Source: Saccostrea cucullata (taxonomy: Eukaryota). Taken from it: 64,000 bases of DNA. The first letter of the stretch is position 1. Each line of letters begins with the position of its first letter. The stretch lies in the NCBI RefSeq assembly GCF_032062105.1, contig NW_026925128.1:1-64000 (forward strand). Reading direction: 5' to 3'. Below the pieces are notes generated by a model. The model ran no database searches, was not told the origin of the DNA, and saw nothing but the letters and a program-made list of their open reading frames with translations. A program made the position numbers and the translations under genes. Shown here one piece after another: positions 16,184 to 56,770 of the stretch.

Positions 16184-19100
16184 CTGAGAAATGAAGAAAG
16201 ATAGTGGATAGGAGAAAGATTATATATATATATTCATCTTCAGACAGATTTTCTTGTTTGTACAGATTTTTATCTTTCTTACAAATTTTTTTTTGGTGAT
16301 ACTGTTCATGTACTCTTTATTAGATTAATTATGATTTTGAAAGACTTGATGAATAAAATGCATTTTTTTCATTTCACAGAAAATCTGTCTGATATTCATG
16401 CAATACAAAATTTTAAAATGTATAAAGATTGAAAGTTACATTAGAAAATTATTGCTTTATATAAAAAAGAGAGAGATATTACAATGGTATTTTTATACAT
16501 ATAAATATTATCAAGATTTTTCTTAATCATATATTCAAAATGCTTTGTTAAATATCAAAGAACCTTTACTATAGAAGAAGCATGCCAGTAAATGTTTAAA
16601 TATTAATTTTGATGTTTGCCAAAAGAATTTAAGAAATTAAATATTTTCCATTTAAATTTTAGAAAAACTATTTTGGATATGATTAACAATGGAGAAAGTC
16701 TGCACTACAAAGAGTTATCTTATTTTATAATTACACATAATATATCTAACTTTAATCATACAAGCTACTGACAATAAATTATGAAGATGCAGACTTTCCT
16801 ACGGTCACTTTCAGAGATATCCCGCTTTTGGTGTTTTTTAATCTGTATATATACCTCCTGTATATCTGCCATCTCCTTGCCCTCTATGTAAGTAGAGGGG
16901 GCCCAGCCCTCATTACCTCCTATCTTCACAAACCACCAACCATCAGCTGTCTTCTGCTTCACCTACAGAAAACAAATCTTTTGTGAAATTAAGTTTTTCT
17001 CTTTTGTTTTTAGGAAGTCAACAAATCTGCACAAAAACATTTGACTTTCAAACTGGAAAGCTTAAGATCTTACCTCAACATTTTCACCTTTCGAGAAGCT
17101 GATACCATCTCCAACTGTGTCAGTAAAGTCAGCAATAGTTACATACTGAGTTTTCTTCTGTTTAGGAGGTTTTATATCTATTTTAATCTGAAAAAAAAAA
17201 AATTAAAAACAATATACACATGCACTTTTCCAAGAATTTTATCTTTCTTGGAGTTACTTCCCTTATCATAATATTTTCATTTCCTTACATTTTTGATAGA
17301 GCTCTGTCTGGGAGGGGGCCTGATGGATCCTCCTCTCTCTAGGGACAGGGACTTTTTAGACAGGTAGGGTTTAGTGGGGCGGGGCGGGGGGTCTGGTTCG
17401 TCATCCCACGAGTCATCCCCTTCGTCCTGCATTAGATCACTGATGTCCTGTAGTCCCCCCACTATCTGGACTCCTGAGGCGCGTGCGACTCTCTCCATGT
17501 GAGCTTTCTCAGCCTTCATCATGTATGTCGCAGGTGCCCATCCCTCTTTTCCATTTTTTCTATAAATATGAATTTTTATCATTTTATTATCCTTTTTTAA
17601 CAATGCAAAACCTTTTCCATCAGGGAGTGTACACTTCAAAAACATATAATCATCAACATTTTATGTCTTTGTAAAATAAGATCACTAGCAAGGACATACT
17701 GGTTAAGGGATATTATTTTTGAAACAATTTCATCTTTTTACTTATTAACAATGACTGTAATATAATTTTGATTGAATTGATGTGATTTTTTCACCCATGA
17801 TTCTTCAAGTTCCTTTAAAAACCAAACAGCCAGAAAAAATGATATTTCGTACCAATGATGGACTCATAACACTGTAATGTGGAACAATGTAAACTCCACC
17901 GATTTACAGCTAAAACTCACCGGATCCACCACCAGCCATCCAGATTTTTCTCCACTACCTCCACCACTGCCCCCTTCTCCAGGGGCAGCTCGTCGGAATT
18001 AGCGGGGTAGTAATCATCGGTGCAAATGAACTGTTCCTCTAAGGGAGAGAATTCATCACAAAATCGTTAGCAACACTTCCTTAGTCGTACTATTATGTAT
18101 CAGTTTACATGTATTTCTTAAAGGAAAATGGATATCAAATTCCTATACTTTTGTGTGGTGATTCATATATGTGTGATTGTATAAAATCAATAAAGGAACT
18201 TTTAACTTTGATAATACTGATTGTAAAAAAAATTCATATATGTGTGATTGTATAAAATCAATAAAGGAACTTTTAACTTTGATAATACTGATTGTAAAAA
18301 AATTACATTTAAAGGTAAAAACAAAATATTTTTTTAATGTTGCAGAAAAAATAAACATATTAAACCATACTGATGTTTTTCAATTTAAATTGTACTAAAA
18401 GAGTTCACAATTATACAACATACAAAATCTACCATTTTGGTGGTATAGAGGGATATATAATTTTTTATCCACTGGAATACAAAATTAAACTGATGCAAGC
18501 TGGCTGTAAAAATAATCAATGAATAGCTCTCATTTCAATTTGAATCTTAATTCTATTTTGACAACAAAATTAATCATATCTTTTATTTGTGTATCAATAC
18601 ACCTTTATATGAGTGTGCATGGTCCTAATTGATAGACCTTTCACATGCCTAAATTATGTAACTCTGAATCAAAACGTAGTCAAGAAACAAAATCTATACA
18701 CATGTATTTCAGAATTATGTTTTGATAACCAAATATTGACCCACTTACAATCATTAATAAAATGTCTCTAATTTAGAAATACAGTTTAAGTTTCTTGTAC
18801 ATTGTAAATACATAACAATAAAAATTTTCCAAAAAAATGTATGGTTAATAGGTATTGTAAGTTCATATTTCATGCAGTTAATGTATCAATGACCCACACT
18901 TAGCTAGGAACAAAGGGGACTAAATTATGAGAACAGGAGCAATATTATCAATGTCCAGTCACCTTCCCCGGGCCTCGCCCGTTCACTCAGTTCCTCTTTG
19001 GTACCGTCCGCCCGTTTTAGATAAGTACTGGGCACCCATCCTTGTTGGTCCTGAACGTGGACAAACCACCAGCCTGAAAATTCACCACAACCAGAACACT

Positions 19101-22100
19101 ACAGAGCTTGCTGACAAAAAGTTTTACAATACATGTATATAACATGTACAACCCCCCACGGTATATAGCAAAACAGATTGACATATGTCAACATAAAGAA
19201 ACTGATTCTCTAGAGTGAATTCAGAAAGGTCATGTAGTTCTTTTTTATGTAATTATCTCCTTGTCAGCAAACTACCATAGATGTGAAATAAACCATGACA
19301 CCAGAACAGTTTTTTAAAATAATTTTTTTACCATAATTATGACTTTCTCCGTCTGAGTCATTCTGATAAAAGAAGACACCTCTTATGTCTGTATGGGTGT
19401 CATTCTCATACAAAACGACAGACTGTCTATCAAATACACTGTCAATGTCTGCTTCTGATTCATTGGTTACTATCATGTTCAAAGGAAAGAAAATTACAAA
19501 AAATGAATTTTAAAGATACAAAAAATCATGCACACTTTATTTTCCAAGAAAGATTTATGATAGGAACAACCTCATTCTCATATTCAGACAAATATGTAGT
19601 AATTATATAAACCCCCAAAAATAATTACAGAAAAACTATAAGAAACCCAACCCCCAAGCAAAAATTTAAAAGTAAATGAGAAGTGTAACCCTTTAATCAA
19701 ATTGAGAGTTTAGTTTTCATTATGTAAGCTTGCATTGTGGTTTCCTTTCACATGTATGAATTAAATGTCTTCCTTTTTGAATCCTCACATTAATGACATT
19801 AATTTAGTTAGTCTCTATACATCTAAATTATTACAACTGAACCCCTTTACAGTGTTATTTTACACAATGACATGAACATTACAAAACTACTGTAAACCTT
19901 CTAGGTGGAAGGTAAAGGAATGTCCCACAAAAGAGCTTTGGTAGAAAGTATATTAAAGGGATCATAACAACTAGGGGACGCCATCCTTTGTTCCGATGTA
20001 CTGTATATAGATCTATACTGGCAATACCTACCACTTTCCGTTTTCTCTATGACCTCGACCTCCGTGCCAGCTTTCAGATTTAGGTCCCATTTGTCCTCTT
20101 TCGTATAGTCAGCTATGGCCCTGTACTGTTCCCCAAGCCTGGGCTCTGAAATCTTACTTGCTGTGTCAAATGTGGCTTTCTTCTTCCTTCTGCAAATATA
20201 CAGATATGCAAATCAGAGTAAAGCAGAGTGCTGACAAATATTTAATCAGAGACTCTCAGTCTTTTATATAGATTTTTATTAAACATTCACTCACTGATTC
20301 TTTCTCTGCAGACATTAAAAGGTTTTTATCATGTCTCAAAATTTTTTGACATTACATTAAGTTTATATGCTATCAAAATCATCCATCAAAAGTTCTTGGC
20401 TGGATAAAAAGCTATATTACAGTTAAATATAGCATAATAAGCCAAAAAAGGGGGGGGGGGTGTTTATCATCAGGGAATTTCATCAGAAATGGTATATAAT
20501 GTGTTCCAGTATATGGATGCATGAATAAAGCTTTAATTCGTACACAGATATTTGATATTTTCCTTCATACAGAGGTGTGATCCCTTTAAACTGTTGTCCT
20601 CAGATGATAGCAATGTCCTTAATAAACTTAAATTGGTCATTGAATACAACAATCTATTCTTCCTTTATTGTGTTCATACAGTTACATGATTTCCTGTTTC
20701 TCCTACATACATATATACACGGACTACCAATCGTCTTCACTGATGCGGGGTGACTAGAAGTGTATTACGTTGATGTTCCTAATAAAACATTCCTATCCTA
20801 TACATATAAACAACCCTGTCACATGTCAGGCATATCGGGCCTCATGTTAGATTTCACGTCTTACGACATTATGAATGAATATATTCCTGAATGATGCTTA
20901 ATTTCTCTTAATATAGGCACAAAAAAACCTTTATGAATATCATGATATTTATTGTCCAAAGATACATCAGTATTTATAGAATTAAGGACACAGCCTTAAA
21001 ATGAGCAATATTCACCTTGTCACAAAAATTTTACCATAAGACATTGAATTGACTAAAAATCCAATTTTTACTCAAATTTTTGAAGATTTATTTTTAATTT
21101 AATCCAATTTAAACCAACACAAAATAAAGTAACAATAGATTTATAAAATCTCATCATTATCAGATTTTATTTCTGAATTTAATATCAAAGAAGCTAGTAA
21201 TAATTATTTTCTGACTGAATTTCTTCAGCTTACTCTAATAAACCATATCCTGCTTTCCTTGGTCATATACACCTAATGGAATTTAATGGATTACCTAATT
21301 AAGAATTAAAATACCTGCACAAGGTACAAGAATAAGTCCAGATCAACTCCATCAGCATACTAAAAATAGACGGAGTGTCCTCCCCTTCTATAACAGGGGG
21401 GTCTCGACTCACATTGGACATGATAATATAATCTGAGTCCGAATTCTCCGACAAAGCTTCTAGATTATCCAGATTGTCCATTATTCCATTAATCTGCTGT
21501 TTATATAATGAAATGGAGTCTATCCCCTTTTTCACCACGCAAATTGCATCTTATTCATAATCTCCTCTCCAAAGGAATGCATGCAAATAATTCTCTTGTT
21601 CCACCTAACATGAGCATGTTCACCAATTTGTATTCCATGTTCACAATTTATACAGTCCAATTAAAAATGAAAGATTTTTAAAAAAAATTTTTCTGCTACA
21701 AGAGAAATCACAATGAACATCAAGTGTATTAAATCAAAGCACCCCCAGACAGCTCTGATGTTAATTAAGGAAGGAGAAAAACATCCCTGTCTATCCCTGC
21801 CCGGGTGCTTAATGATCTATCTTCCTGGCTGACAGGTAGAACCACCCCGAGGCCCCACCGGCCAATACATTAGCAGAGAATTGTGTACCCTTATGTAACA
21901 GTACACTGTCGTTTCGTGTAAGGTTTAAAGAGTCAGTGTGATAATTGATGTAATAAAGTTATATCATTAAAGGTCGGAAACTGCAAGTCAATTTAAACTT
22001 TACAATTAGATATTCCAAAATAAATACCTTTCAAAAGACACCCCCCCCCCAAAAAAAAAATTAAGACATTTTTGGGGGTTATCAATTTCTTTTACAAATG

Positions 22101-24055
22101 AATATGAAGGTAATAATTTGATTTAAATATCTGCAATAATGGCAAAAATACAATTATTTTATTATATAAAGTGCTTCATAAAACACAAAATTATTTTGAC
22201 TCTCCATCTGAGTACATTTATTTTCAAAATTAACATCTGTATTAAGACTTAAGTGAAGACACCTTTCAGAGGGTAACACAAGTGTTAGATACCGGTATAC
22301 TATTATGATGGTAACAGTAATGTTATAAATGTTTCATAAACCACGGAAACCAACCATAACGTTACTCAAATTTATTTTTGGCTTTACTGACATCCTTATA
22401 ATCTTATTATTCTCAATATCTAACAAGCTGTTACATTACGTTGTAAATATCCACAGGTAATTGTAGCTATATACTGCAGAGTTGTTTGAATGTGTTGTAA
22501 AGTATCAGGTGTAAATACCTGTATAGTTAAACAAATAGAAAGTTTATCTTTGTTTAGTTTCCCACTCCTTTGTACACAAGATCACCAGAAGAGATAATCC
22601 TTATAGTAACACTCAGGTCATTTCTAAATAACCATGAACACCTCCAACTGTTTAAATAAGTTTCCATTTCATTTAATGTATAGTATTGTTTATTAAAGCT
22701 TGATTGTAATAACATTCTACAAAACATTCACAATTGAAAATAAAGAACTAATTTTGTACGCTTCAGACAAAAACTCCACACAATATTATTTCTTTAGCTT
22801 GTTGTTCTGCTTTTCCAAGCTTGTTGCTCTAGACTACAATTCCTAAATTGTTGCTTTATTATTTCTTACCTGGTCATTCTACTATTTTCCAACCTTGTTG
22901 CTCTACAGTTTTCTAGCTTGCTGCTTTACTATTCCTTGCTTGTTGCTTTACTAATTCCAAGTTCAACTTGTAGGATTACTATTTCCTAGCTTGTTGCTCT
23001 AACATTTCATAGCTTCTTGTTTGAATCTACTATTTCCAAGCTTGCTGCTTTACTATATAGCTTGTTGATATACAATTTCCTAGAGAGTTGCTTAACTATT
23101 TCCTAGGCTTGCTGCTCTATCATTTCCTACTTGCTGCCTAGTTGTTCCTTTACTATTTCCTAGCTTGTTGCCCTACTATTTTCCAACTAGTTGATCTAGG
23201 ACCATTTCCTAGCTTGTTGCTCTATTATAATATATCTTGGCTTATTGCTATTCTATTTCCTAGCTAAAATATTGTTCTATTATTTCTGAGTTTGTTGCTT
23301 TACTAATTCACAGCAAGCTTGTTGCATTATTTTCTAGAATAAGCTAATGTTAATTCACTATTCCCTAGAATATAGCTTAACTATTTCTTAGATCTTGACT
23401 ATTTTCTAGTTACCATTTTGCTTACATACTATTTCACAGCTTGCTGCTTGCCTAATAAACTACATCTTAAACATAAAGAAGAAAGCAGAATCCATGTCAT
23501 ATACAAAGAACTTTTATCTATCTATAAATCTCACTAGACAGGCTACTTCTCTTGCTTAAATTTCCTCTGCATCTTTCTTCCTTTCTGAGTATTCTTCTCA
23601 AACTTTATTATTTAACAAGAAAAGGTATGTAAAATTTTGTTTACCAGATAATTTCTGTAAACTTTTTTAAGGTACATAATTTAAGTCACTCAAAATTTAT
23701 CACACTTTTTTTGTTACATGTAACTGATCAATAAATTCATGAGTTTAGTGTTTTGAAGTGAAATAAGCTTCTGTATGCATTTGTTTTAATCATATTTGAT
23801 AGTGTGTACATGATTATCTAAGTGGACAAGAGAAATGCAAAGGTGTTACAATGTAAAATATGTTTACAGTACAAAACATTATTATTTTTGTGTTTTACAA
23901 CTTTAATATTCTCTTTAAATCACACATAGGGAGTTGATTATTTCCTTTATGAGGAGTATAATTCCCACACGAAAAAGAAGGAAACGGCACAATTGAATAT
24001 TTCACATCCATCCTCACAAGCAAATCTTAATTAACATGCAATTACATCAATACTT

Positions 24056-24095
<40 letters not shown>

Positions 24096-24634
24096 GATTT
24101 GACCATTCTGTTCTTTACCAGATTCCCCCTTGTAATACAAATTTTGACCCCACTCTACCCCAATGATCATAATTTAAACAATTTATAAATCTACATATCA
24201 TAGGATGCTTTGATTCAAATGTAATAAAGTGCATTCCCCATTGTGGCCCGACCTACCCAAGGGGTCATGATTAGAACAATTTAGAATCTACACTACCCCA
24301 GGATGCTTCCACATAACTTTCAGCTTTTCTGGCCCAGTGGTTCTTGAGAAGATTTTTAAAGATTTTTCCTATACATTTCTATGTAAAACTTTGATTCCCC
24401 ATTGTGGCCCCGCCCTATCCCCGGGGGTCATGATTTTAACAATTTAGAATATACACTACCCCAGGATGCTTCCACATAACTTTCAGCTTTTCTGACCCTG
24501 TGGTTCTTGAGAAGATTTTTTAATGATCCCACCCTGTTTTTGTCGTTTCTTGATATTTTGTGAAAAAAAAAATATATCATTTTAACAATTTAAATTCCCC
24601 TTCACCCAAGGATGCTTTGTACCACGTTTGGTCA

Positions 24635-24696
<62 letters not shown>

Positions 24697-24737
24697 AGAT
24701 AGACAGCTAGACGGACGGACGGACGACGGACAAAATG

Positions 24738-24784
<47 letters not shown>

Positions 24785-27700
24785 TACAAAAATTTTTTTG
24801 TTTGTACATGTTACATACTTACCTTATATAGGTATGTGCGGGGGTCTGTTTTATAAAAGGTCAAATACTGAACTTGATTTGCACCCCCCCCCCCCCCCCA
24901 GGCAATCTAATGATTAAATAAAGAAAACCACATTCAGTCTTTAATATTTTTAGTATTCTTGTCTAATTTAAAGAAAATAATTATTATTGTTGACCTTTTA
25001 TATCATGCTGATCTAACAACTATAGCTAGGTTACATTTAATCTAAACTTTTTGACAAATATATAGTAATCCCTGATAAAAGGGATATAAAATATTTATCT
25101 TTGACAAGATGATTCAATATGATTATCACAAATCATATATTATGAAGAAACATTAATTAAAATGAACTATGATCCCATCCCTAGCAAGCACCAAATCTTT
25201 TAGATAAAAAGATCCTCTTAACAAATTGACTATTAAATACAGAGTTGTTGAAATTTAAGATGTACACTGTATATCAACTGATAAAACAGGCACTAACAAG
25301 TAATTTACACATGACAGTACAGTCAAACTTGTCTTAGCGGCCACCCGAAATCAACGGCCACTCGCGATCAGCGGCCACTTTCAGTTCCCCCCGAGGATTT
25401 TTACTATATATTTTAACTGGAATAAACGGCCACCTATGTAACGCGGCCAGCGGCCACTCAAATTCCCCACCCACAGCCTTATTGACACTGTAATAGGCGG
25501 CCATTTCGTCACTTGCTGTGATTCTATTGTGTCTTTTAAACTCAATCGCTTATGTAATTATATCCCGATAGCCAATTTAAACTAGCTATTAATGCAATTA
25601 AACAAATTACTATTAGATACACTGAACTCTGTTTGCATTTATGAAAAAATCTGTTAGATCAATTTGTAATTATTTTTCAAGATCGCCGATTGCAAAATAA
25701 AAATAATTTAAATACAATTGATGCTTTCCTCTATCTAAAGAAATTCACACCTTTTGAATTTTGATTCCATGTAGAAGCCCTAATTGCTACTCTTGTGAAA
25801 ACAAAGTGCTTCATGTGGCATGATTATCTCGTGAATTTCACTATTAACAGACAATCGATAGGGATTAGTCACGCTCTACTGCATATGACACCTGTGTTAT
25901 GGAATGATTTCAACTGCGTCAATACATCTCTCTGGTCAACTGGTTAATTTTATTTCTGTGTCTTATGTTACATAGAAATTCTGATAGATTTATAAACAAT
26001 AAAATTTCCCAAACTTTAAAAACTTCAGCAAGTAAGTTAATTGCCGATGAATTAATGGAAGGGGGGGGGGTTACACTGCTGACCATTTTTGAACATATGC
26101 AAGTGAAATTTTTATTGACATATTCTTACTGGTACTTAACTTTCTATGCTTTATTTTATTTACCATTAAACTGTATTTTTGTGTATTTTTTTTTTTTCTT
26201 TATAAAAAAGGATAATAGTCAGACACTGTATGTATTTCTTGTTTGACTAATATGTAGGAACAGAAACATGCACAAAACCTTAAAAAATTCTAATTCTTTA
26301 ATAGTTTTTTGAATGAGCTTGAATTATTATATATACACATAAATAGCCTTTGTTAAATTGACCTGTTTTATTATTTTATTAATTTCACTGTTGCGCTTAA
26401 TGTTGTTTATTCATTTCCCGAATATCTTTTTCGAGGGCAAACTGGAATAAGAGGCCACCTGTCTTAAGTGGCCAGTTTCCAGACTTCCCAAAGGTGGCCT
26501 CTTAAAACAAGTTTGACTGTATTTGACTTTGATGATCTTATGCAAGTCTAAACATAGGTAGAAGCACATTCAGAAATGTATACCTATAGGTCCTTAAAGG
26601 TCAAGGTCTCAAATACCCAGTGAATGTTCTCTACAATCTGTTATACTTTCATTTAAGTTCTTTTATTTATTAATATATTTACATCCATTGAATATTTTCT
26701 CCTTTATTTCTTAAGAAAACCCATTGCGTTAATCACTGCATGAACTACATTAGACATGTCACGCGACTGTACCTGTGCAGATTTCTTGATCAGTGGCTGT
26801 TCCATCAATGAAACATATAAAGACGTTTGCATCCTTAATACAATAATTAATCTTTTTAATCCTACTTTAAATGATTATTTTCACAGATATAAATATAAAC
26901 AATAAAATGTCTTTTTTGTTTGTTAATTATTCTAAATTAACATCAGCTATTGCAGAAAAAATTTACATAACCCGCTTACGCGGGTTATGTATTTTTTCTG
27001 CAACAGCTGCTTCCATTAATTCCAGTAATAACAAACAAAGAAAACATTTTATTGTTTAAATAAACATGGGATAGTGAGAGTTTAAGAAATCAGCATACTG
27101 GTAATTTTGTACCCGTGAATTAAATAGAAAGAATATGCGGAATTATGACCCCACCGAAAAAAAGTACATCTACAGTATTTTAGTGAATAGCTCCAGACAT
27201 TGCTATACAGTTCAGAAAATTGTTTTCAATTAATTCAGCTTTATAACTTTATGTTGGCCATCCTTTCCTTTCCTCATAAATTAATGATAAAACAAATTAT
27301 ACAATTCAGTAAAAATTATCAAAGTTTTCATCTGAAATCATTTCCTTCAATTAAAATGATCAATTCTCTGTATCAGAACAACTGCCATTTCCTTGTTGTT
27401 ATCTGTATAAATACATTATGTACCTTATTCCTGATTAACCACAAAATCATGTTTCAATAAATGATGCAACATAATCTTCACTGTCTTCTGATCTTTAAGT
27501 ACACAAATACCAACTCTCAAAACAATTCATAATCATAATAATTGTACAAATCTTTATTTTAAATGCACACAAATTAGAAAATTTAATGGGTGAATCGTTT
27601 TATGTATTGTTTCATATGAGAATGTTTTAGATCAATCTGGGGAAAAAAGCATATAATAAAGCTGAGAAGAATGTTTTGGTACATGTATAAGAAGGCTTAT

Positions 27701-30700
27701 ATAAAATATATCTTACTATTTGTTCTTAAATTCTGTTTGTTTTTTGGGTTTTTTTTTAACAGAATCTCAAAAGAAATGTTTGCATAAAAACTTCTGTAAA
27801 ATTCAGACAATCATAGTTTATAGCTTTAGGCCTTCAATTTCAAACTTTTAAACATTTTTAGCACTCAATTCAGACATTATATATCAACATGCTGTGTGCA
27901 CTCTAAGACAAATAAAATTTATCTCACTCCCTCCATCGAGATCAAAGACATGCTTTACAATCTGTATACCTTAAAAGTTGATAGATTTAAGCAAAAGTGA
28001 CTCCCCATCATTCAGAATTAGTCAAACTTACGGTAGATATATATGTACTTTGACTGGCCATTTGCAGTACATTTATTCTACATTCATGCCTAAAAAGAGG
28101 TAGAGCCACTGTGGGCTTTATTTGGCCCTGAGAATTTCTGAAAAATCAAAACCACTCAGTTTAGGTTGCAAATGCAGTATTTATTACTTGGAGTATTGGT
28201 GACCACCTATCTATTCATCATGATGTAATTTTCCATCTAGTCAATGCATTTTGACGTCATAAAATACATCATTTTCTTCATATCCTGTAAATTCCTTTGA
28301 AAATGACCTAAAGTTGAAGCATTTTTTCAATATTTCATATAGAACACAACCTCTGATCCAAAATATGCAAATACATAATGAAAGCTCTGTTTCTGAAGAT
28401 CAAAAAACATGTTTTACTTTTTGGATCATGGACTGTGCTCATATTTTAATTCTTTGCAAAAGATAGTCAAATACGCATGGCCTTTTCTGCAAATTTCAAG
28501 AACATTGCAATTTCTCAAACCTGTTTTCCAATATCAAGATTCTCAAAACGAAATTTTATTATAGAAAATAAAAGCACCAAGTGTCTACTTTATTTTGATA
28601 TATGAAATGGGAAAGAGGATGGTAGTTAATTAATTGATATAAGTACAGGGCCATTTTATGCATAAGATGGCTCTTGCTCTTTAAACACTCATTGGGCATG
28701 AAGAAAAAGAATACAGTATATTTTGTTTCTGATAAACTTTGTATCATTATCATGAATATTTTCATTTTCAAAACACAATTTTTGAATGAAACATCATAGA
28801 ATGCCTGATGTAAAATTATTTTAAATTATTAAGAAAGTGAAGTAAATTTGGACTATATTAGTTTTTTCTCAACATTATTCAATCAGTGCAAGTACTTAAT
28901 GCATACAAATGTCATAAAGCTGACTGATCACCTTCAATAATATTGCCAATACCAGGCGACTTTTATGTCCACTTTATAACAAAAACCACAAACTGCCCCT
29001 GATAAAATCCGACTTTTTACCATCTCATTATCATTAATAAGGACTCGTCTCTCAGTCAAAACACTTCATGACTAACATTGAAGTGGGTGGCTTTGAATAT
29101 AACACTGAATCACTTAGCTGCAGAACTGTAGCTCTCTGACAAAAATATACACTGGAGAGCTTAGATACAGTGCCAACCATTGAAAAAAAAAAACTGTCTT
29201 TGCACATAAAAAATGTGCTGTTTCATCAATTTTTTTCTCTGTGTGTTTTCAAACTGCCATCTCAAAATACATTTGTATTACTAATCTAGTGCTCCTACCA
29301 TATTTTTTTTTATAATTTCCACAACAAACCATTTCTTATAATTGTTAACAGCCCTCTCTAGTCTGAAATTGAGACTCAATTTGTAAGTTTGAGATGGCAA
29401 GATTTAACTGTATATACTTTCATAAAAAAATTATCATACATGTACATTTGCTCTCATAAATTTGCATTTAAAAAACATTTAATGAAATCCCTACCAGTGA
29501 AACCAGAGGGGACTATAGGTTTCTTCTGAGTCTGTCTGTCCGTCTGTGTAAAATGAGCTGCTCTGGTCAAAGTATGCATGTATAAATATCTGATGGCAGG
29601 GAAACAAGTCTTTCTTTGCAAGGCAGATCGACTTCATTCCAAGACATTTCAATCATAATTTTCATAATTAAGTAATTACCAAAATGTCCACAGGGGAACT
29701 TTTTCATATAAAAGATACTATAATATGACATCCTAAACAGAAAAGGGGATCCCGGTGTCATATAATATATTGAACCCTGCGATATTTTGAACCCGGGTTC
29801 AAAATATCGCTGCGAAATATTGAACCCCCCTATAAAATATTGAACCCGGGGTTCAAAATATTATGGCAATAAAATATTGAGTCCCCCTGTCCATTTAATT
29901 TAAGAGGTAGGGGCAAAATATTATGGCCATAAAATATATATTTTACAGGGAGGGGGTTCAAAATATTATGGCCAGTCCCCCTGCCCATTTAATTTTAGAG
30001 GGAGGGGGGCAAAATATTATGGTTCCCCCTGCCCTTTTAATTGATGAGGTAGGGGGTTCAAAATATTATGGCCATAAAATATTGAACCCCCCTGCTCTTT
30101 AAATTTAAGAGGGAGGGGTTTCAAAATATTATGGCCATAAAATATTGAATCCCCCTGCCCATTTAATTTTACAGGGAGGGGGTTCAAAATATTATGGCCA
30201 TAAAATATTGAATCCCCCTGCCCATTTATTTTTACAGGGAGGAGGTTCCAAATATTATGGCCATAAAATATTGATTCCCCCTGCCCTTTAAATTTAAGAG
30301 GGAGGGGGTTCAAAATATTATGGCCATAAAATATCGAGTCCCCCATCCATTTAATTTTACAGGGAGGGGGGCTCAAAATATTATGGCGATAAATTATTCA
30401 GTCACCCTATTGAACTGTTTTGAAAAGGGAATGATGATATAATATGCCTGCAAATAATCTAAAACCCTTCTCCCACTTACACACTTCCACTGGCCATAAT
30501 ATTTTGAACCCCCTCCCTCATCAATGAAAAGGGCAGGGGGACTCAATTTTTTATGGCTATAATATTTTGAACCCCCTCCCTCATAAATTGAAAAGGCAGG
30601 GGACTCAATATTTTATGGCCATAATATTTTGAACCCCCTCCCTCATAAATTAAATGGACAGGGGGACTCAATATTTTATGGCCATAATATTTTGAACCCC

Positions 30701-33700
30701 CTCCCTCATCAATTCAATATTTTATGGCCATAATATTTTGAACCCCCTCCCTCATAAATTAAATGGACAGGGGGATTCGATATTTTATGGCCATAATATT
30801 TTGAACCCCCCTCCCTGTAAATTAAATAAGCAGGGGTACTCAATATTTTATGGCCATAATATTTTGAACCCCCCTAGATGTAGAATTAAATGGGCAGGGG
30901 GACTCAATATTTTATGGCCATAATATTTTGAACCCCCTACCTCTTAAATGAAAAAGGTAGGGGTTCAATATTTTATAAGGGGGTTCAATATATCGCAGCG
31001 AAAAAGTGAACCCAGGTTCAAAATATTATGCGATATTTTGAACCCGGGTTCAATATATCGCGGTATCAAAATATTATGCTACACCGGTAAGGGACATGTA
31101 TTGCTTAGGCAATTATACTCTCAGAATGCTTGTTTCAGAAGATATTTTCATAAGCAAATCAGACAACTTACTCTGAACAGTTTCTCATAAATTGTGCTAG
31201 TTGCATACTGGAGATACTATGAGCAAGTTAGCTCATGAAATTATACCCCTAATGCAATTTTTCATATTTTGCTATTTGCAATTTCATAACTGTCATGACC
31301 TAGAACTTCCAAAAATGACTTTGCTGTAGAAAAAGACACATGCTTTGATTATAAAAAATCTTTGAGTAAAATATAAACATCCATTGTTTCTTATTAATAC
31401 AGAAATTAATAATTAATGAACCTGATATGAATTTTCCTCTTTTTTCTGTCAGTGGCCTTGAATTTACCAAAATGATCTTTAGGGATAGATCATGACACAC
31501 CCTATAAGTCATAAGAAGTCTTTGTAACCTTGAACTTGTTGTAATGACCTTGTATCAACATCAAAATCTACCTTACATGTAATATTTGCTTCATTTTTAT
31601 TGATATAAAAGCTATAAATGCCCATTTCCAAAGAAAGAAATTAATTTAATTTGTCTGCAAAATGGGCATTTAATCTTCCTACTTTGCAGAAAGCAATAAT
31701 TCTGGAATATTACAAATTATTCAATAGAAAATAAACTTTTATGTAATACACTGAATAATTATATAACTAGTATTTTAATGATTTTACTTTATGTAGTAAA
31801 CACATAGGAAGAAGGAAGAAATTATGTAGAATTAATTGCCTTTATGAACATGATGGTATTTAACTCTTATTACAAGGAGGAACTTAATTTTAGCACTCAG
31901 TGGATGAGCAAAGCAGACAATAATTTGGTCTATACGAAAACCATATGACATTTATGAAGAAGCTACTCAAAAGAGGAGACGAAAAACTTGTAAACAAGCA
32001 AGAGAAATAAATACTCAATTTCACTGACATAAATTAATGCAAACACTCAACTTACGGATCTGAGGAAAACGAATTTTTAATCCGAGTAAAAATACTTCCA
32101 AGAGAAAGTTTTGAAGAATCTGCAGACTTCATTATAAAGCAACAAAAATTGTCATCCTCAAAAGAATCATAACACAGAAAATAGCATCTAAGCACAAACA
32201 AATGAACACAACTAGGTATAATTAGAGTGTGGTATTAACTTTTCAGGATATAAATGCATGGCCACTAGATTCAGGCTTGAGTCACTCAATATTAAGTAAT
32301 GCATGACGATCAGCTTATGATGGACAAGGATCAATTTCTGACAACCTTTAGTCCAGTGTTTGTGCAGGTGACTTAACATTTGAAAGATCTCAAACTGTAT
32401 GTCTGGTCTTTGCCAACCACAGACTGAAAGAAAACCTGCCTGTATACCGCAAACATCTTCACATTGCATATCTCGATCATCAATTATTGGCTTGATCGAT
32501 GCACAATGCAATTTGGAACTGGTAGGTCATCTTAGTGCGCATTCAATGGCTATATTCAATTAATAAATGTACATCCTTATTTGTACCAAAGTAAATATAA
32601 AATTGTGAGTAAATTTATCACATTTAAATAACTGAATCAAAATTATACTTGTATGTGTACTCTAGCTATTTAGATTACCTTTGTCAAATTTATAAAAATT
32701 CCACAACTTGTTCAATTTTTTTTTGACTGATTAAATATGTAAAATATATACGCGGGACGGAAATCCAAGCGTACTTAATATAAATGTAAGGCATATAGTG
32801 ACAATCAGCATTTGCAGATTAAACAGAAATTGTTATTGTGTATGCGAAAAAAGGTCTACAGTATATGGACATGGTCATTTCTGAATCAGCATTTGCAGGT
32901 TACATTTTGTGTATGCGAGGGTAACATGATACTTGTCATGACTTGTGCCATTTTATCAGTAAATTGAATTTTATTGTTTTGAAATTCTGCCTGAATCTTA
33001 ATGTGTTTTGCTAAAAGAAACTCCAACAAGACAACATATACTTGACACAGTTATAAAGTTAAACACATCAGGTAGAGAAAATGTTATTTATGACCATCCC
33101 TGGTATGAGCTCATCTTTAATTTTGAAATATGTATTTTTTGTGACTTTCCATTAGTATAAGTTATCATTTAATATGTCTTTCTTGCTTCATATAAACTTA
33201 ATTAACACTTTAGGAAATTTGAGAAAAGTAATCATAATATAGACAAAATAATCTTATATTACCTAACTTTTCAATACCATTCACAGATATTTTACCCACT
33301 TTTATGATATGGTGTCTGTCCCAGTATTAAATTCAAGTACCTGTAGGACCCCAGTGAAAGTGTTTATTGAATAAACAAAGAGTTTAAGTAACCTTTTCCT
33401 ACCCTAGCAGGTAAAAGTAACATGGTGTACAATTTTGTTACAAAGAAACGACAAGATTCTTCTATGACTCAAAAAAATATACTAATATTAACCAATTGTA
33501 AAAATATATTTGTAATTCCATATGCAAACATTTTTAATATTTATTTACAATCAGATATATGTGTAATATATGTGGTTTTAAATAATTCACACTAACCTTA
33601 AACCTTCTAGTCCTAAAAAATTCCAAGTATATGGACCTCACAACTTTGCTGGAAAAAAATCTAACTAAAGAAACCTATGTACTTACTGAACATGAATATT

Positions 33701-36700
33701 GTCCACTGCCCAAGAATTACGAATTCTGCTAACAGTATCTGAAACACTATCCTTAATTCGATGTACAGCAGTCAACATGGTCTCTTATTTTAAAACTGTT
33801 AAAATATTTTTGTCACCATCAAGTGATGAACTGATATGTCGCACAGCAGTTTCCTATCGATATGTAATCAAAGAGAAAAACGCATTGTCACAAGGAAAAA
33901 AAATATGGGATTAGCCAAGATTCTGTTCAAGAGGGAAGTAACATTGTTTTATGATCCATTGAAGACCTAAAATAAGTGAGACAGAAGGGAGATCTTTGTT
34001 TGCACCTGTATCCTTTAGGGGACATTTCAAAATTTAAATGGATCAATTTCACATCTCTTTCAAGTTTGATGGCCTTATCTAAGCCAGGACATATATAGAG
34101 TCCTCAATGAAAGAGAAGCACATATGACTTGAGAAAAGATGCCTGCATGGTCACACTGCATTTATAATGAGACAAATAGAACTTCATCCACCTGAGGTAT
34201 TGTTAAATGAATGAATTTATTTCAATAATGATCATATGGTAACTTAAATACATCATATGTTTTTCAAAGATGAATATTTACCAATCAAATCAAAATTAAT
34301 ATTACAAAAAATGCATTTTTAATTCAATTTTGTACAGTATACGATAAGCCTGACAGTCACCAATTTCATACTTGCAATAAATAATCTTAAATGAAATTTG
34401 TTCATGACACCTTAATGTATCTGTTTACAGGTAAATAAGGGGGAAAACATTGCAACATGATAAGTTCATTAGCTGACTCACTATAGGGTCAATGTTTGTT
34501 CAGAATAGTAAATACCTAATTAATAAGGTCATGGACTGTCCAAATGTTTAACATGTTCCAGAGATATGGAAAAAGTCAACACATCAATGTGTCAGGCACA
34601 GAGAGACATGAAGAAAGACAGATCAAATTATCCTTATAGTTATCTATGTAAGGTCCATGTATGTCTAATGTTAGGTGTCTCTTTAAGGCTGATCTGTAAC
34701 TATGTCATATTTTATCATTATCAGAACAAGTATATTTTGCTTAAATGTTTGGCATTAGGTTTCCTTTCATCTTTCTATAACCTGGTATTAAAGGATAAAA
34801 TGCTATGACATTAAAACAAGGATTTAGGTCTTAGCTATTTCCATTGAATCCTAGAAATGTGTACTTATCACCAAAACCATAATAAGGTCACTGGTTATCA
34901 AACTGAATAGTAACAACCACATGTCTATATTGCAGTTCTCAGTCTTAAATGGTTTTGCCACAGACATTAAAATCTTTCATTGCACTAAGATCCTCCCCTT
35001 TTTGTATCAGTATTTCTGGCTATATATAACTCTTTTGTTTCAATACAATATCTCGAGAAGCTTTTGCAATGAAATTTTACACAACAACTCTCTATGGCCT
35101 ATAGAAGACCTCTATCAATTTTGAGATAAAAAGGTCAAAGGTCAAGGTTAAAAAAAAAAAAAAAACACTTTTGTTTCTAGTACATGGTATCTCAAGAAAC
35201 CTTTGAGCTTTTGCGGTGAAATTTAAACCACAACTCCCTGTAGCCTAAGGAAGACCCCTATTGATTTTGACATCAAATGGTCAAAGGTCAAGGTCAAAAT
35301 TCATATGTTCTGTGTGTATATGTAAAACTTTCATTTCCTTGCAATATTTCAAAAACCTTTTGCCTTCTAAAAGTGCCCCTCTTGATGGCAAAGATTCAAC
35401 AGAGCTTTAAAGTATTTTCCATTCACAGTTATGCTCTCAAACCATTTTCATTCATAAGGTATGCCATCATCAAAAAATGACCTATCAGCGAATTCTTTTA
35501 TCACTCCTCCTTCAAATATCATTCTAGACTGTATAAAAATGATTTTAAGATAACAGTTGTAATAGTCAATTTCCTTGCCCCCTATTTATCACAAACATAT
35601 AGAACTTCTAGTCTTCCTTGTTTCTTACATAAGTTTGTACTTAAAGTGTGTATTGTTTTTATAGTTAGTATGTGAAGTACAAAGCACTTCTAGTGTATTA
35701 CATATGAACATGTACTGCATCATGTAATATTATTATCCTCCTTCTCAAACTACTATGAAATTAACTCTCGATCTTCCTGCTGCATTGTTTTAAATGCTTA
35801 CTACATCAAGCATAAATAAAGAAGTTTATAAATTCAATCCACATTCATAATTTGCAAGAAATCAATTAAATAAGAGGGAATCATGTGTTGAATTCAATAC
35901 AAATAAACTTTTGAAATTAAGTAGACTGTAATTATGAATTGTTGCATAGGCTAGTTGCTTGCTGGAAAAAATCACTATAAATTACCCACAAATAGCATAA
36001 TCCTCTTATGAAGCATTATTATCTGCAAAAATATGCTTATTTCATTGTTGGGCTATGTTATTCTCTGATTATTTAAAGAAATTTTTTTCTTCCTTCCTTC
36101 TTCACTGAGAAATTTTATGTCTTAAAAATCTTTAAAAATTTTAAAATACTTAACTCACATCCCATTTTTTCTTCATATGCATCGTCTATATAATTGTATG
36201 TTACGGTTGCACCTAAGCAGAGTGTTTTATCACTAAAATAAATGTTCTCTGGACTCGGTTTAACAACAGAATGGGTTCTGTGCATTGGGAATTAATTTAG
36301 CAAAGAAAAACACTGGAGATGGAACTCTAACTCAGTGCATTTACTATGAAATTTAATTCAAAGAGTTTCAAACATCAACATGCCTCACATGGCGTGTATT
36401 TTTAAAGTTAAAATGTTATGGAAAAGTTTTTAATTCTTCAATTTATACAGTAAAACCCAATTATTGCGAAGTCACTGGGACCTATGAAATTACTTTGCTA
36501 TATATCCGTATTTCGTTATATCCGTACAAGGAATTCGTTAAATTTATATGGCTGGGATCCAAGATAACCGCTACATGTATATCCATGAATTCGCAATATC
36601 CGTGTTCATACAAGACAAGTTTTACTATGATAAGGATTGAGTTTTTGGGTAAAAGATATCCACAGTCTTTAAAGGGTTTGTTCCCATATTAATTTGATAG

Positions 36701-39700: not shown

Positions 39701-42700
39701 CAATGACACATATATACTTTGTACTACATTTTCAGACATATATATCACAATAAAGAGGCAAGGGAGGAGAGACAAGGGAGGGAAGCAGTACTTATTTGTC
39801 CTCTGCCACAATACAGAGATGAGGGAGGAGAGACAAGGGAGGGAAGCAGTACTTATTTGTCCTCTGCCACAATACAGAGGTGAGGGAGGAGAGACCTCAT
39901 CACAGGGAAGCAGTCTCTCCTCCAAACTGATCTCTGCCATAAAATACAAAGATGAGGGATATAGGATATAGACAAGTCATTTTTTTTGAAGTCATAAATT
40001 TTCTGCCACAATACAGAGGTGAGGCAAGGAGAAAAATTCGTATTTTTCTGGGAGGGAATGCATTTTATAAACAATCCTACTAATTATAGTTGCCACATTT
40101 TATACAGAGATTATTTTTGTGGAGAGACAAGGGAAAGTACAAGTTTTACTTAAATCTTAAGTGTCCTATTTTGGGAGGATTAAGATGTCATCCTCCTAAA
40201 AACAAAATATTGAAGAACTAAAACCAGCACCTCATCACACTGGGAGATTCTCTCCTCCAAACTGATCAGAGCCTGGAATAAAAAACAAAAATGGTGACTG
40301 ATATACTGTATATATTTGCCTACAAGTCATTTTTTTTTAGTCATAAATTTTTGTCCAAATAATTGTGTCCGATCTTATAGGCAAGTCATAGAAAAATTCG
40401 TATTTTTCTGGACAACGAAATGCATTTTATAGACAATCCTACTAATTATAGTTGAACAATGTCATTTTATACTGAATTATTTTTGTGTTGAAAGATTATG
40501 GGTAAAGTACAAGTTTTACTTAAATCTTAAGTGTGCATAACTATTTTTTAATGATTAAGATTGGAGAAAAAAGTACATTTTTTTAAAACAAAAATATTGA
40601 AATGTAAATATATAAAACACGGGAAAGGGTTACATTTATAAAATTGTCAACCAATTCTGGCAAAAAATTCTACCGACTTATAGGCAAGTCAATGACAAAT
40701 CCCTCCAAAATATCTGCAAAAAATACAACCAACGTAATAGGCCATTATATACGGTATAAAGCTCATCACTTTGGTCTTTTAGTGAAGCTCAACTTTGTAT
40801 CATTTGATTTTACTTTGTGCTTGGTTGATATGCTTTTCCATGAAGCCAAGATATAACTGATTATATTTATGAAATATCTGTCTTATTTTTCCATTTCATG
40901 ATGTGATCAATCGATTGGCTTGCCTGATAATTTGCATAAATACCGAAGGCGTTTATGCATAAATTTATCACGCAAGCCAAACAAATGATCATTGTCATGA
41001 AATCGAAAAATCTGACAGTTATTCCTTATATTTACATGCTCTTAAAAATTATCTGCCAATACACGGTGCTACAAGACTTTTATATTTCACACATGTATAT
41101 TTGAGGCCATCATTGTCAACAACTTTAAGCCTCTGCACGTGATTTTTTTAACCATGCCATAACTTTTAAACGGAACCAGTGCATTGATGTAATCCTTATG
41201 AGAAGAATGCAAAGTACACCTTGGCTATTTGTAATTTTAAAAATGTTAACCTTGGTCACAAAAACATTGGAAATGTATAATATATATGTATTCTTTATGA
41301 CAAGGGGATACCAAAAACTTTATATAATATGTGATTATTCTTCAATAACTTACAATAAGTCTCCCCCTTTTCTCTTTTTATTTACTCTTTTTACTTAGTC
41401 AGGCCCCTTTTTAATTAAAAAAAAATTTCCTTGTCTGGCAGAAACAACAATTGTTATTTAAATCTAATTTAAGTTTTGAGGAAAAGTAGCAATATTTCTT
41501 CAAACTTATTGTATTAACATAGTACATAATAAACTTCCTGTCTAAATATAGATTTCCTTGACTTGGTATGGTTACACAATACATGTACTGTTATATTTAT
41601 GGTGTACATTTAGGGTGTTGTAAAAAATATATGCTTCCTTAAAAACAGTCGCAGTGTTTGCTGCTGGAATCAACCTCTGAATATTTACAAAAAAGGATTT
41701 AATTAAAAAAATATACAAAATAATTTAATATTTATATGATTGACTGATTGATTGATAAATTGATTGGTATACCCTCAATACTGAATTAACCCTTGATTGC
41801 CCAGGCTATTGCACAGTGCAAGATGTTAAATGACTTAAGACTTAAAGTTCTAACTTCTGTCTGAAGATGAAAAACTAAATAAAGTATTTTTACAGACAAT
41901 CACTAGGAATATATTTTACTTATGAAGGGAGTAAACCAATTACCTGTAAAATTACTATGCTAGTAAACCCTCTTCTGAAGATGACAACAGAACTCACCTT
42001 ACAATAATCATCTATCTGACTTAGTCTCTTCAAGGCCACCTCTCTCACCTGACTGCGGCCAAAGTATATTTTACCTGTATAAAATTAGATGGTTAATTAA
42101 TATGAGAAATGACCACAACCAAGTTCATTCCTCTGTTGCCTACCTTAACAATATCTTTAAAATCAATTCTGTATATATACATATATTTAAAAGTGTGTTG
42201 AAAGTGTTGATAGAATGTGACTTGAATTTAAAATCCCTATATTACCTGGGAGAAATGGAATAACTCTTTGGTTAGGGTCCAGCTGTCCTGATTCTACTGG
42301 GAATTTCTCTAATAATGAGTGCTATTGTACAAAAACAAATTAAATGATAAGACATAATTAAATTGGTTTCAAAGCAGTGAAGGATCTCTAATTCTCCTTA
42401 AAATTTAGCCTCATTCTTCATGTGAACTGAAAAAAATTTTCAACCAAAATTACATGTTTCTAAAAAAAGATAGTTTAATTTTCAGTAAAAATTAACTTTT
42501 CTTATTAAATAAGTTTGTGCTTTGAACAAGGACTTGAAAAAATGCCATTATTTGTGCTTATCTTAAAAAGCCTAGCTTGCACAAATATTAAAGGTCCTGA
42601 CCAATACTTTTGTTTAGGCTATATATATTGATTTTTTTAAAAAGAAATTTACAGCAATATTATTTCTCATACAATTTTTATTACATGCACATGTACAAGA

Positions 42701-56315: not shown

Positions 56316-56770
56316 GGGCATGGGGATGAAATGTTGAAGTACAGATTAAGTTAATTGGTTATGTTGTCAGTATATGTGTTCCTGTCAGAGAGGTCAAGGT
56401 TATGAATTTATTTCAATGCAGGGGGAAAGTGTTAAAGGTCAATTGTAAAGACAGAATTCAACATCTGATCTATGTATGGTTATTTTTACAGAGAAATGAG
56501 TTTAATGCTACATTTCTTGTAATGTCCATTTGATTCATGATGATTTTCAATGAGAAAAATCCTTTGAGTTTTCCTTGATTTGTAAGTTACCAATAAATTG
56601 GATTATTCTCAGCAAGAGGTAACAATTGATTGTGTATTCTCCAAACATCAAATAAATGAATGATTTTAACATTAATAAAAATTAAAAAGTTCAAACAAGA
56701 AACAATGATATTGTTCATATTTATAGTTTATTCATCACCTGAGTGACTCAGGTCACCTTTTACCATCTGT

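What the first reader, a model, noticed from the sequence alone, without database searches (positions are those of the whole stretch)
19332..33778. Cassette of phase-matched alternative first exons that would swap out the PX domain of the Tks5-like adaptor
Seen: the 20-kb intron after the PX exons contains three short ATG-initiated open exons (33778-33687, 32132-32056, 21481-21315). Each ends at a GT donor in phase 2, the phase of the acceptor at 20189 that opens SH3-1. A fourth (19476-19332) ends in phase 1, matching the next acceptor (19073). Known: vertebrate Tks5 has PX-less short isoforms from intronic promoters. Inference: this invertebrate locus has a larger set of interchangeable N-termini on a common SH3 scaffold, a multi-promoter 'variable exon' system. 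Caveat: I found these by searching for donors, so some phase matches could be chance.
Basis: partly seen in the sequence, partly recalled or inferred. Interest (0 to 1): 0.8.

Follow-up and report, generated by a model that had tools for sequence, protein, structure and literature searches.

The report
Oyster Tks5 gene: alternative first exons
[quoted passage not shown] They are already in the public annotation. The fourth looks like an unannotated internal exon, and in this species the exon joining PX to the rest of the protein has decayed.

Summary
All four open stretches, their GT donors and their phases are exactly as described. Phase matching alone is not beyond chance. This intron offers 66 phase-2 GT donors reachable from an ATG.

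Outside evidence settles it. A, B and C are letter for letter the N-termini of RefSeq isoforms X2, X3 and X1 of the Saccostrea cucullata SH3PXD2-like protein. Each is joined to the exon that opens at 20189. The same three N-termini recur in S. echinata, Ostrea edulis, Crassostrea virginica and Magallana gigas/angulata. A and C reach Pinctada. ATG, frame and donor are conserved, dN/dS is about 0.1 for A and C, and each exon has a conserved upstream block.

So the cassette is real but already annotated, and the kind is known from vertebrate Tks5beta and Tks5short.

D is not a first exon, because its ATG is window-specific. It is a conserved, unannotated, frame-preserving cassette exon (19469-19332) in the n-Src loop of SH3-1.

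The exon linking PX to the scaffold has decayed in this genome only.

No RNA reads were available.

The parts
41998..43752 (-). PX-domain coding exons 1-4 (about 43752-43668, 42895-42815, 42321-42243, 42074-41998)
   Evidence: RefSeq S. cucullata P0052 (135 aa) maps at 100%. Pfam PX PF00787, 44 bits. Single copy in the assembly. Window-lineage base changes are 5 in unchanged codons against 3 in changed codons.
40183..40272 (-). PX-linker exon 5. The 5' half is intact. The 3' half is degraded by frameshifting insertions, an in-frame TAA at 40185-40183 and loss of the ancestral GTAAGTA donor.
   Evidence: Five-species alignment: S. echinata, O. edulis, M. gigas and C. virginica share one exon length and a phase-2 GTAAGTA donor, and only the window differs. 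The exon is also intact in Pinctada.
34405..34560 (-). Conserved non-coding block about 650 bp upstream of exon A. A 34-nt core (34481-34448) is invariant except for one base in C. virginica and contains TGAGTCA (34480-34474).
   Evidence: Alignment of five oysters. Coordinates.
33687..33778 (-). Alternative 5' coding exon A (30 codons + 2 nt)
   Evidence: Identical to the N-terminus of P0044 (S. cucullata isoform X2). Orthologues P0050, P0002, P0010, P0003 and Pinctada P0041. ATG conserved in all five oysters. Donor conserved, GC-AAGT in O. edulis. dN/dS 0.10-0.32.
32180..32380 (-). Conserved block directly upstream of exon B, with an invariant TGACTCA (32284-32278)
   Evidence: Alignment of five oysters. 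Coordinates.
32056..32132 (-). Alternative 5' coding exon B (25 codons + 2 nt)
   Evidence: Identical to the N-terminus of P0046 (S. cucullata X3). Orthologues P0043, P0054, P0059, P0073. ATG and GTAAGT donor invariant. Window versus S. echinata: 4 synonymous and 0 non-synonymous changes.
21720..21940 (-). Conserved block 240-460 bp upstream of exon C. A further conserved stretch lies about 50-110 bp upstream of the ATG.
   Evidence: Alignment of five oysters. blastn hits in O. edulis, M. gigas and C. virginica.
21315..21481 (-). Alternative 5' coding exon C (55 codons + 2 nt): an acidic stretch followed by a hydrophobic helix-like segment that ends in two Cys
   Evidence: Identical to the N-terminus of P0047 (S. 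cucullata X1). Orthologues P0001, P0053, P0075, P0072, P0039. Intact exon in the C. virginica genome and a C-like exon in Pinctada. Variable sites by codon position 13/9/43, dN/dS 0.06-0.12.
20032..20189 (-). Common exon: basic RKKK stretch plus the first half of SH3-1. Phase-2 acceptor, phase-1 donor.
   Evidence: Protein identical in S. echinata and M. gigas; O. edulis differs at one residue and C. virginica at two.
19332..19469 (-). Candidate cassette exon D (138 nt, phase 1 to phase 1), which would insert 46 residues just before the WW of SH3-1
   Evidence: A pyrimidine tract plus AG, a GT donor, a length divisible by 3 and a stop-free frame are present in all five oysters. Only this one of six frames is stop-free in all five. 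A D-like exon with the same phases occurs in Pinctada. tblastn E 9e-38 to 2e-5. It is in none of the 85 proteins held when one search was run; later fetches show it only as unspliced ORFs.
18963..19073 (-). Common exon: second half of SH3-1, phase-1 acceptor

Best explanation
The window carries the Saccostrea cucullata orthologue of the Tks5/Tks4 (SH3PXD2) adaptor on the minus strand. The long intron between the PX-coding exons and the exon that opens SH3-1 holds three alternative ATG-bearing 5' exons, A, B and C. Each is spliced through a phase-2 donor to the common acceptor at 20189, so three PX-less proteins of 945, 940 and 970 residues share one scaffold of five SH3 domains. This much is shown by exact identity to annotated isoforms and by conservation. 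Each exon probably has its own promoter, because each has its own conserved upstream block. That step is inferred. The N-termini probably replace PX-mediated lipid targeting. A and B look like short basic amphipathic helices and may be old duplicates of each other. C has an acidic stretch, then a hydrophobic helix with two Cys that abuts the RKKK stretch. These functional readings are inferred and weak. D is not a start exon. It is a conserved, frame-preserving cassette exon that would place an acidic loop with one or two Y-x-N motifs in the n-Src loop of SH3-1. Its conservation is shown, but its inclusion in mRNA is not. In this species the 3' half of the PX-linker exon has decayed and lost its donor. 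The ancestral PX-plus-SH3 long form therefore cannot be made, and the PX exons stand as a separate 135-residue reading frame. The sequence state is shown for this assembly. The biological consequence is inferred.
For: Identity: P0044, P0046 and P0047 (RefSeq XP_062606299, XP_062606300, XP_062606298) map to the window at 100% over every residue, with first exons at A, B and C. Recurrence: the same three N-termini are joined to RKKK in S. echinata, O. edulis, M. gigas and C. angulata. In C. virginica A and B are annotated and C is intact in the genome. M. gigas UniProt K1Q5T9 and the Pinctada imbricata GenBank record KAK3095649, which are not RefSeq models, have C and A respectively. Sequence conservation: ATG, donor and frame are conserved. 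Third-position excess and dN/dS about 0.1 hold for A and C. B has 4 synonymous and 0 non-synonymous changes against S. echinata. Only A and B have GTAAGT donors in the intron, against 0.21 expected. Conserved upstream blocks are seen. For D. For PX-linker decay; no second copy exists in the assembly; RefSeq models PX as a separate gene, P0052. Domains: five SH3 stretches in P0047 and PX in P0052. The vertebrate precedent, Tks5beta and Tks5short from starts downstream of exon 5, is described in PMC4178035.
Against: No RNA reads could be examined. No RNA run was listed, so no junction or transcription start was seen directly. RefSeq XP models are computational, and their RNA support could not be inspected here. 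Searches for spliced transcript fragments found only unspliced ORFs or nothing. D shows weaker coding constraint (dN/dS 0.23-0.57, codon-position counts 19/17/24) and is in no annotated isoform. The window appears to be the same assembly as RefSeq, so the decayed linker exon is not independently confirmed. Structure predictions of the N-termini are of low confidence (mean pLDDT 47-48). Hydrophobic moments are only marginally above shuffles.
Confidence: 0.8

Rival explanations
1. A, B and C are coding but are not true first exons with separate promoters. One or more non-coding leader exons lie upstream, possibly a shared one, and the three are chosen by mutually exclusive splicing.
For: An AG preceded by a weak pyrimidine tract lies 17 nt upstream of the ATG of A. 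The most conserved non-coding block lies 650 bp upstream of A and begins with GTGAGT, which could be a donor. No transcription start data exist.
Against: B and C each have their own conserved block immediately upstream. The three exons are spread over 12 kb. The sequence after that GTGAGT is more conserved than the sequence before it, which suits a regulatory element better than an exon end.
Confidence: 0.2
2. D is a conserved non-coding element, such as an intronic splicing or transcriptional regulator, and is never included in mRNA.
For: It is in no annotated isoform. The profile search found only unspliced ORFs. dN/dS is 0.23-0.57, and synonymous divergence between window and S. echinata is low (0.11 against 0.52 in the neighbouring exon).
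Against: Only one of six frames is stop-free in all five oysters. Lengths are 138, 138, 117, 156 and 150 nt, all divisible by 3. The AG acceptor and GT donor sit at homologous positions in the phase of the flanking exons. The same layout is found in Pinctada. A Y-x-N motif is present in every species.
Confidence: 0.25
3. D is an alternative first exon starting at the ATG at 19476, giving a form that begins inside SH3-1.
For: In the window the ATG is in frame and the donor is in phase 1, matching 19073.
Against: The ATG reads ACG in S. echinata and has no counterpart in O. edulis, M. gigas or C. virginica, whereas the AG 6 nt downstream is conserved. The product would carry half an SH3 domain.
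Confidence: 0.04
4. The decayed PX-linker exon is an assembly error or a rare null allele. The species normally makes a PX-bearing long form.
For: The evidence comes from a single assembly. The window is 100% identical to the RefSeq models. The PX exons are intact and still look constrained. A Pinctada annotation also splits PX from the scaffold although its exon is intact, so split models can be artefacts.
Against: The changes are several non-homopolymer insertions plus many substitutions confined to about 60 nt, while the 48 nt before them carry one substitution. All other exons are clean. No alternative haplotig exists in the assembly. No GT in phase 2 precedes the stop (read from the sequence shown).
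Confidence: 0.25
5. All four are chance coincidences of ATG, open frame and GT in an AT-rich intron.
For: 66 phase-2 GT donors are reachable from an ATG in this intron.
Against: See: exact matches to annotated isoforms, conservation in six or seven species, and purifying selection.
Confidence: 0.01

Closest known systems
RefSeq isoform models of the same gene (S. cucullata XP_062606298, XP_062606299, XP_062606300) and their orthologues in S. echinata, O. edulis, C. virginica, M. gigas and C. angulata
   Same: Exons A, B and C and their junction to 20189 are exactly these models.
   Different: The models are automated predictions. No paper was found that discusses them. They do not contain D. 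They show PX as a separate gene without explaining why.
Vertebrate Tks5beta and Tks5short, the PX-less products of SH3PXD2A (PMC4178035, and Li et al. 2013 as cited there)
   Same: PX-less isoforms start downstream of the PX-coding exons. Each has a short unique N-terminal peptide on the common SH3 scaffold, and a second promoter is proposed.
   Different: Mouse Tks5beta extends exon 6 upstream by 29 bp rather than using a separate spliced exon. Oysters have three such starts and Magallana four. Whether the peptides are homologous was not tested. In this oyster the PX-bearing form appears to be lost.
Variable first-exon clusters spliced to constant exons (clustered protocadherins, UGT1A). This comparison comes from general knowledge.
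   Same: Several alternative 5' exons, each with its own upstream conserved region, join one common acceptor.
   Different: Here there are only three or four exons, and they encode 25-56 residues rather than whole domains. A and B may be duplicates (hhalign P about 1e-3) but C is unrelated. There is no evidence on how the choice is made.
Neuronal c-Src N1 insert in the n-Src loop of its SH3 domain. This comparison comes from general knowledge and applies to D.
   Same: An alternative exon placed in the n-Src loop, just before the conserved WW, of an SH3 domain.
   Different: D is 39-52 residues, not 6. Its inclusion in mRNA is not shown. The vertebrate Tks5 alternative exons are described as lying on either side of SH3-1, not inside it.

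Membership tests
Tks5/Tks4 (SH3PXD2) adaptor family | Multiple SH3 domains (five in Tks5) on one chain | tested here: met
   Pfam SH3_1 and SH3_2 give five stretches in P0047, which maps 100% to the window.
Tks5/Tks4 (SH3PXD2) adaptor family | N-terminal PX domain on the same polypeptide | tested here: not met
   PX exons are present (PF00787). In this genome the linker exon has a frameshift, a stop and no donor. The feature is met in S. echinata, O. edulis, M. gigas and C. virginica. The gene is therefore an orthologue, but here it appears to yield only PX-less products.
Tks5/Tks4 (SH3PXD2) adaptor family | Orthology by sequence to proteins named SH3PXD2A/B | tested here: met
   The best hits are all SH3 and PX domain-containing protein 2A/2B-like, 65-88% identity over the last exon.
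Internal-promoter PX-less isoforms (Tks5beta / Tks5short type) | An ATG-bearing exon downstream of the PX exons, spliced in frame to the SH3 scaffold | tested here: met
   A, B and C. The junctions are taken from annotated models, not from reads.
Internal-promoter PX-less isoforms (Tks5beta / Tks5short type) | A separate transcription start for each form | not testable with these tools
   No RNA run was listed. Only conserved upstream blocks point to it.
Internal-promoter PX-less isoforms (Tks5beta / Tks5short type) | Protein products detected | not testable with these tools
   No proteomic data were available.
Alternative cassette exon (for D) | AG acceptor and GT donor, length divisible by 3, open in the frame of the flanking exons | tested here: met
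   Met in five oysters and in Pinctada.
Alternative cassette exon (for D) | Included in some transcripts and skipped in others | tested here: inconclusive
   Skipped in all annotated isoforms. Inclusion was never seen; the profile search found only unspliced ORFs. No reads were available.

The most novel reading that the evidence does not exclude
In S. cucullata the ancestral Tks5-like gene has split. The PX exons survive under constraint as a stand-alone 135-residue PX protein. The five-SH3 adaptor is made only from three internal promoters with their own N-termini. A deeply conserved but never annotated cassette exon (D) can place a Y-x-N phosphotyrosine-type docking loop inside the n-Src loop of SH3-1. 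This would be a natural PX knock-out of a Tks adaptor and a new regulated SH3 variant.
Probability: 0.3. Interest if true: 0.55.

Novelty: new member of a known kind. Interest (0 to 1): 0.38.

Why it matters
PX-less Tks5 forms are known in mouse and human, but their role is still debated. This analysis shows that oysters keep three such forms, with start codon, frame, donor and upstream DNA conserved, and that two of them reach pearl oysters. PX-less forms are therefore an old and selected part of how this adaptor works, not a vertebrate or tumour oddity. A species in which the PX link has decayed would be a natural test of what the scaffold does without PX. For annotation, exon D and the broken linker exon are two concrete points that the public models do not capture.

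Tried and rejected

(2) Spliced transcript fragments in the protein collection. A search with the common SH3-1 stretch of P0010 returned only ORFs read from unspliced DNA. A search with the B-type N-terminus of P0073 found no candidate.

(3) Profile search with D from five species against 1.84 billion representatives. It gave four strong hits, all unspliced ORFs from Crassostrea/Magallana-like DNA, and three weak hits not followed up. None was in a spliced context.

(4) AlphaFold2 of the C-type and A-type N-termini with SH3-1. Mean pLDDT was 48 and 47, so only a tentative helix at 39-55 (C) and 3-22 (A) can be read. No fold search was attempted on such models.

(5) ESM Atlas search with the C N-terminus gave nothing usable.

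(6) Pfam on the A, C and D peptides gave nothing above threshold.

(7) A as a duplicate of B. hhalign gave P about 1e-3 over 16 columns with probability 22%, which is suggestive only.

(8) A third GTRAG phase-2 candidate at 35723-35629 aligns only with S. echinata at intron-level identity. It was dropped as chance.

(9) The Magallana-specific fifth N-terminus (P0076) has no counterpart in the window.

I did not build or search a joined D-containing protein or a joined PX-plus-SH3 model for this genome. Exons were handled one by one by reference, or through database proteins.
Full report
**What is in the sequence**

- A (33778-33687) is 92 nt with donor GTAAGT.
- B (32132-32056) is 77 nt with donor GTAAGT.
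- C (21481-21315) is 167 nt with donor GTATTT.
- These three start with ATG, are open, and end in phase 2.
- D (19476-19332) is 145 nt with donor GTAAAA and ends in phase 1.

The exon opening at 20189 begins with the third base of a codon, followed by RKKK and the first half of an SH3 domain. It ends at 20032 in phase 1. The next exon opens at 19073 with the WW half of the same domain. The A and C regions are single copy in the 1.17-Gb assembly.

**Is it more than chance?**

From the window alone, hardly. The 19,993-nt intron (32% G+C) contains 66 distinct GT donors in phase 2 that an ATG reaches through at least 75 open nucleotides. The other phases have 54 and 56. Shuffles give about 34 for phase 2. 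With a GTAAGT donor, only two candidates exist in the whole intron, A and B, both in phase 2. Shuffles give 0.21. C would not stand out by its donor.

**Identity of the gene**

The last exon (16186-14321, 622 codons, two SH3 domains) finds "SH3 and PX domain-containing protein 2A/2B-like" proteins of oysters. The best hit is Saccostrea echinata at 88%. Cluster members include five Saccostrea cucullata RefSeq isoforms and a separate 135-residue PX protein. All of these map to the window at 100% over every residue. The window is therefore S. cucullata, most likely the annotated assembly itself. P0047 has five SH3 stretches and P0052 has a PX domain.

**A, B and C are real and already annotated**

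The N-termini of S. cucullata isoforms X2 (P0044), X3 (P0046) and X1 (P0047) are letter for letter A, B and C. Each is followed by RKKK from 20189.

The same three N-termini occur in other species:
- S. echinata: P0050, P0043, P0001.
- O. edulis: P0002, P0054, P0053.
- M. gigas and C. angulata: P0010, P0073, P0075, P0072.
- C. virginica: A and B are annotated (P0060, P0059).

C also heads M. gigas UniProt K1Q5T9 (P0039), and A heads the Pinctada imbricata GenBank record KAK3095649 (P0041). Neither of these is a RefSeq model.

I fetched the orthologous loci and located the exons by tblastn. The order PX, A, B, C, SH3-1 is the same in all oysters. C is intact in the C. virginica genome. A C-like exon ending TGCAG|GT in phase 2 lies between A and SH3-1 in Pinctada.

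In the DNA alignments the ATG and the donor are conserved in all five oysters. O. edulis has a GC-AAGT donor for A.

Substitutions fall mainly on third positions. Counts by codon position are A 8/10/20 and C 13/9/43. dN/dS is 0.10-0.32 for A and 0.06-0.12 for C. B has 4 synonymous and no non-synonymous changes against S. echinata, and 11 against 5 with O. edulis.

Magallana has a further, lineage-specific N-terminus (P0076) between A and B, with no counterpart in the window.

**Promoters (inferred)**

At distances where the introns no longer align, a few blocks in the long intron still do.
- One lies about 650 bp upstream of A (34560-34405). Its 34-nt core is invariant apart from one base in C. 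virginica and holds TGAGTCA.
- One lies directly upstream of B (32380-32180) and holds an invariant TGACTCA.
- One lies 240-460 bp upstream of C (21940-21720).
- Smaller ones lie at 22580-22503 and 20814-20700.

Each alternative exon thus has its own conserved flank. This fits separate promoters but does not prove them. The heptamers match the AP-1 consensus, which I recall from general knowledge. No binding was tested.

**D is something else**

D is conserved too: tblastn gives 9e-38 in S. echinata, 7e-12 in O. edulis, 1e-7 in C. virginica and 2e-5 in M. gigas. Its ATG is not conserved. It reads ACG in S. echinata and has no counterpart elsewhere.

What is conserved is the following:
- a pyrimidine tract and an AG six bases downstream of that ATG;
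- a GT donor after ..ATG;
- lengths of 138, 138, 117, 156 and 150 nt, all divisible by 3;
- one frame, out of six, that is free of stops in all five species.

That frame is the one set by the phase-1 end of the preceding exon and the phase-1 start of the following one. Pinctada has a D-like exon with the same phases.

D (19469-19332) is therefore best read as a cassette exon. It would insert 39-52 acidic residues, with one or two Y-x-N motifs, between ...TESG and WW. By general knowledge of SH3 structure, that position is the n-Src loop.

Constraint is weaker than for A-C, with dN/dS 0.23-0.57. The exon is in none of the 85 proteins held when one search was run; proteins fetched later show it only as unspliced ORFs. 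A five-species profile search of 1.84 billion representatives found it only in ORFs read from unspliced DNA. Its inclusion in mRNA is thus not shown. I put about 0.6-0.7 on it being a real exon.

**The PX link is broken here**

The exon that ends the PX region and carries the linker to 20189 is 102 nt long. It ends GA|GTAAGTA in phase 2 in S. echinata, O. edulis, M. gigas and C. virginica, and the same end is present in Pinctada.

In the window its first 48 nt carry one substitution. The rest carries several insertions that shift the frame, many substitutions and an in-frame TAA (40185-40183). The donor is gone. No GT in phase 2 precedes the stop, and exon 4 ends in phase 0, so no in-frame join to 20189 is available. 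I read both points directly from the sequence.

The assembly holds no second copy. RefSeq models the PX part as a separate 135-residue protein that reads into the degraded stretch (P0052).

Over 109 PX codons, with O. edulis as outgroup, the window lineage has 5 base changes in unchanged codons and 3 in changed ones. S. echinata has 9 and 1. The numbers are small but do not look like free decay.

"Swapping out PX" may therefore be moot in this species. The scaffold seems to be made only in PX-less forms, and the PX exons may encode a stand-alone protein. This rests on one assembly. I put about 0.25 on an assembly or allele artefact.

**How it most likely works**

- Shown: three alternative 5' coding exons join one acceptor and give three PX-less five-SH3 proteins, conserved across Ostreidae and in part in Pinctada.
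- Inferred: each exon has its own promoter, and the N-termini provide different localisation or partners in place of PX lipid binding.
- A and B have the periodicity of a basic amphipathic helix, with maximum moments 0.58 and 0.52, reached by 7-8% of shuffles. They align weakly to each other (P about 1e-3).
- C has an 18-residue hydrophobic stretch (mean 0.48 on the Eisenberg scale) with a narrow polar face and two Cys, directly before RRKKK.
- AlphaFold2 draws helices there, but at pLDDT below 65.

**Comparison with what is known**

In mouse and human, Tks5beta starts in intron V by a 29-bp upstream extension of exon 6. Tks5short starts in intron VII. Both lack PX. A second promoter is proposed, and exons 7 and 10 are alternatively spliced (PMC4178035). 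The alternative splice sites are described as lying on either side of SH3-1 (PMC6991978).

The oyster system is the same kind of arrangement, but with more starts, separate spliced first exons, and a candidate exon inside SH3-1. I found no paper on this gene in molluscs.

**Limits**

No RNA run was listed, so there were no reads, junctions or start sites. RefSeq models are predictions.

Noticed in passing
window 14762, 14119-14099 and 11189-11172 (minus strand): RefSeq isoforms X4 and X5 (P0048, P0049) leave the last exon at an internal donor after 14762. They end in short terminal exons (7 residues at 14119-14099, 6 residues at 11189-11172), which gives forms without SH3-4 and SH3-5.
   Followed up: partly
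window 58200-60230 (plus strand): Several overlapping open frames resemble a reverse transcriptase of a non-LTR retrotransposon, broken into pieces. This is judged by eye from the translations.
   Followed up: no
window 52500-56320 (plus strand): Long Lys/Arg/Glu/Ser-rich open frames suggest a neighbouring gene for a highly charged protein.
   Followed up: no
window 24800-24050 and 13970-13010: A dispersed or tandem repeat family is also present in the S. echinata, O. edulis and C. virginica loci. In C. virginica it forms arrays with a period of about 157 bp (L004:11180-12660).
   Followed up: no
L005:2180-2915 (Pinctada imbricata): The 5' part of the PX-linker exon is present in three tandem copies. 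Only the last runs on into the intact linker and donor. The Pinctada annotation splits PX from the SH3 scaffold although the junction exon is intact.
   Followed up: partly
window 20814-20700 and 22580-22503 (minus strand): Two further conserved non-coding blocks lie in the intron. They are shared with O. edulis and with C. virginica or M. gigas. Their function is unknown.
   Followed up: partly
window 30400-30020 and 30700-30920: Open frames contain a repeated ...[13 protein letters not shown]... unit on both strands, a tandem repeat inside the long intron.
   Followed up: no
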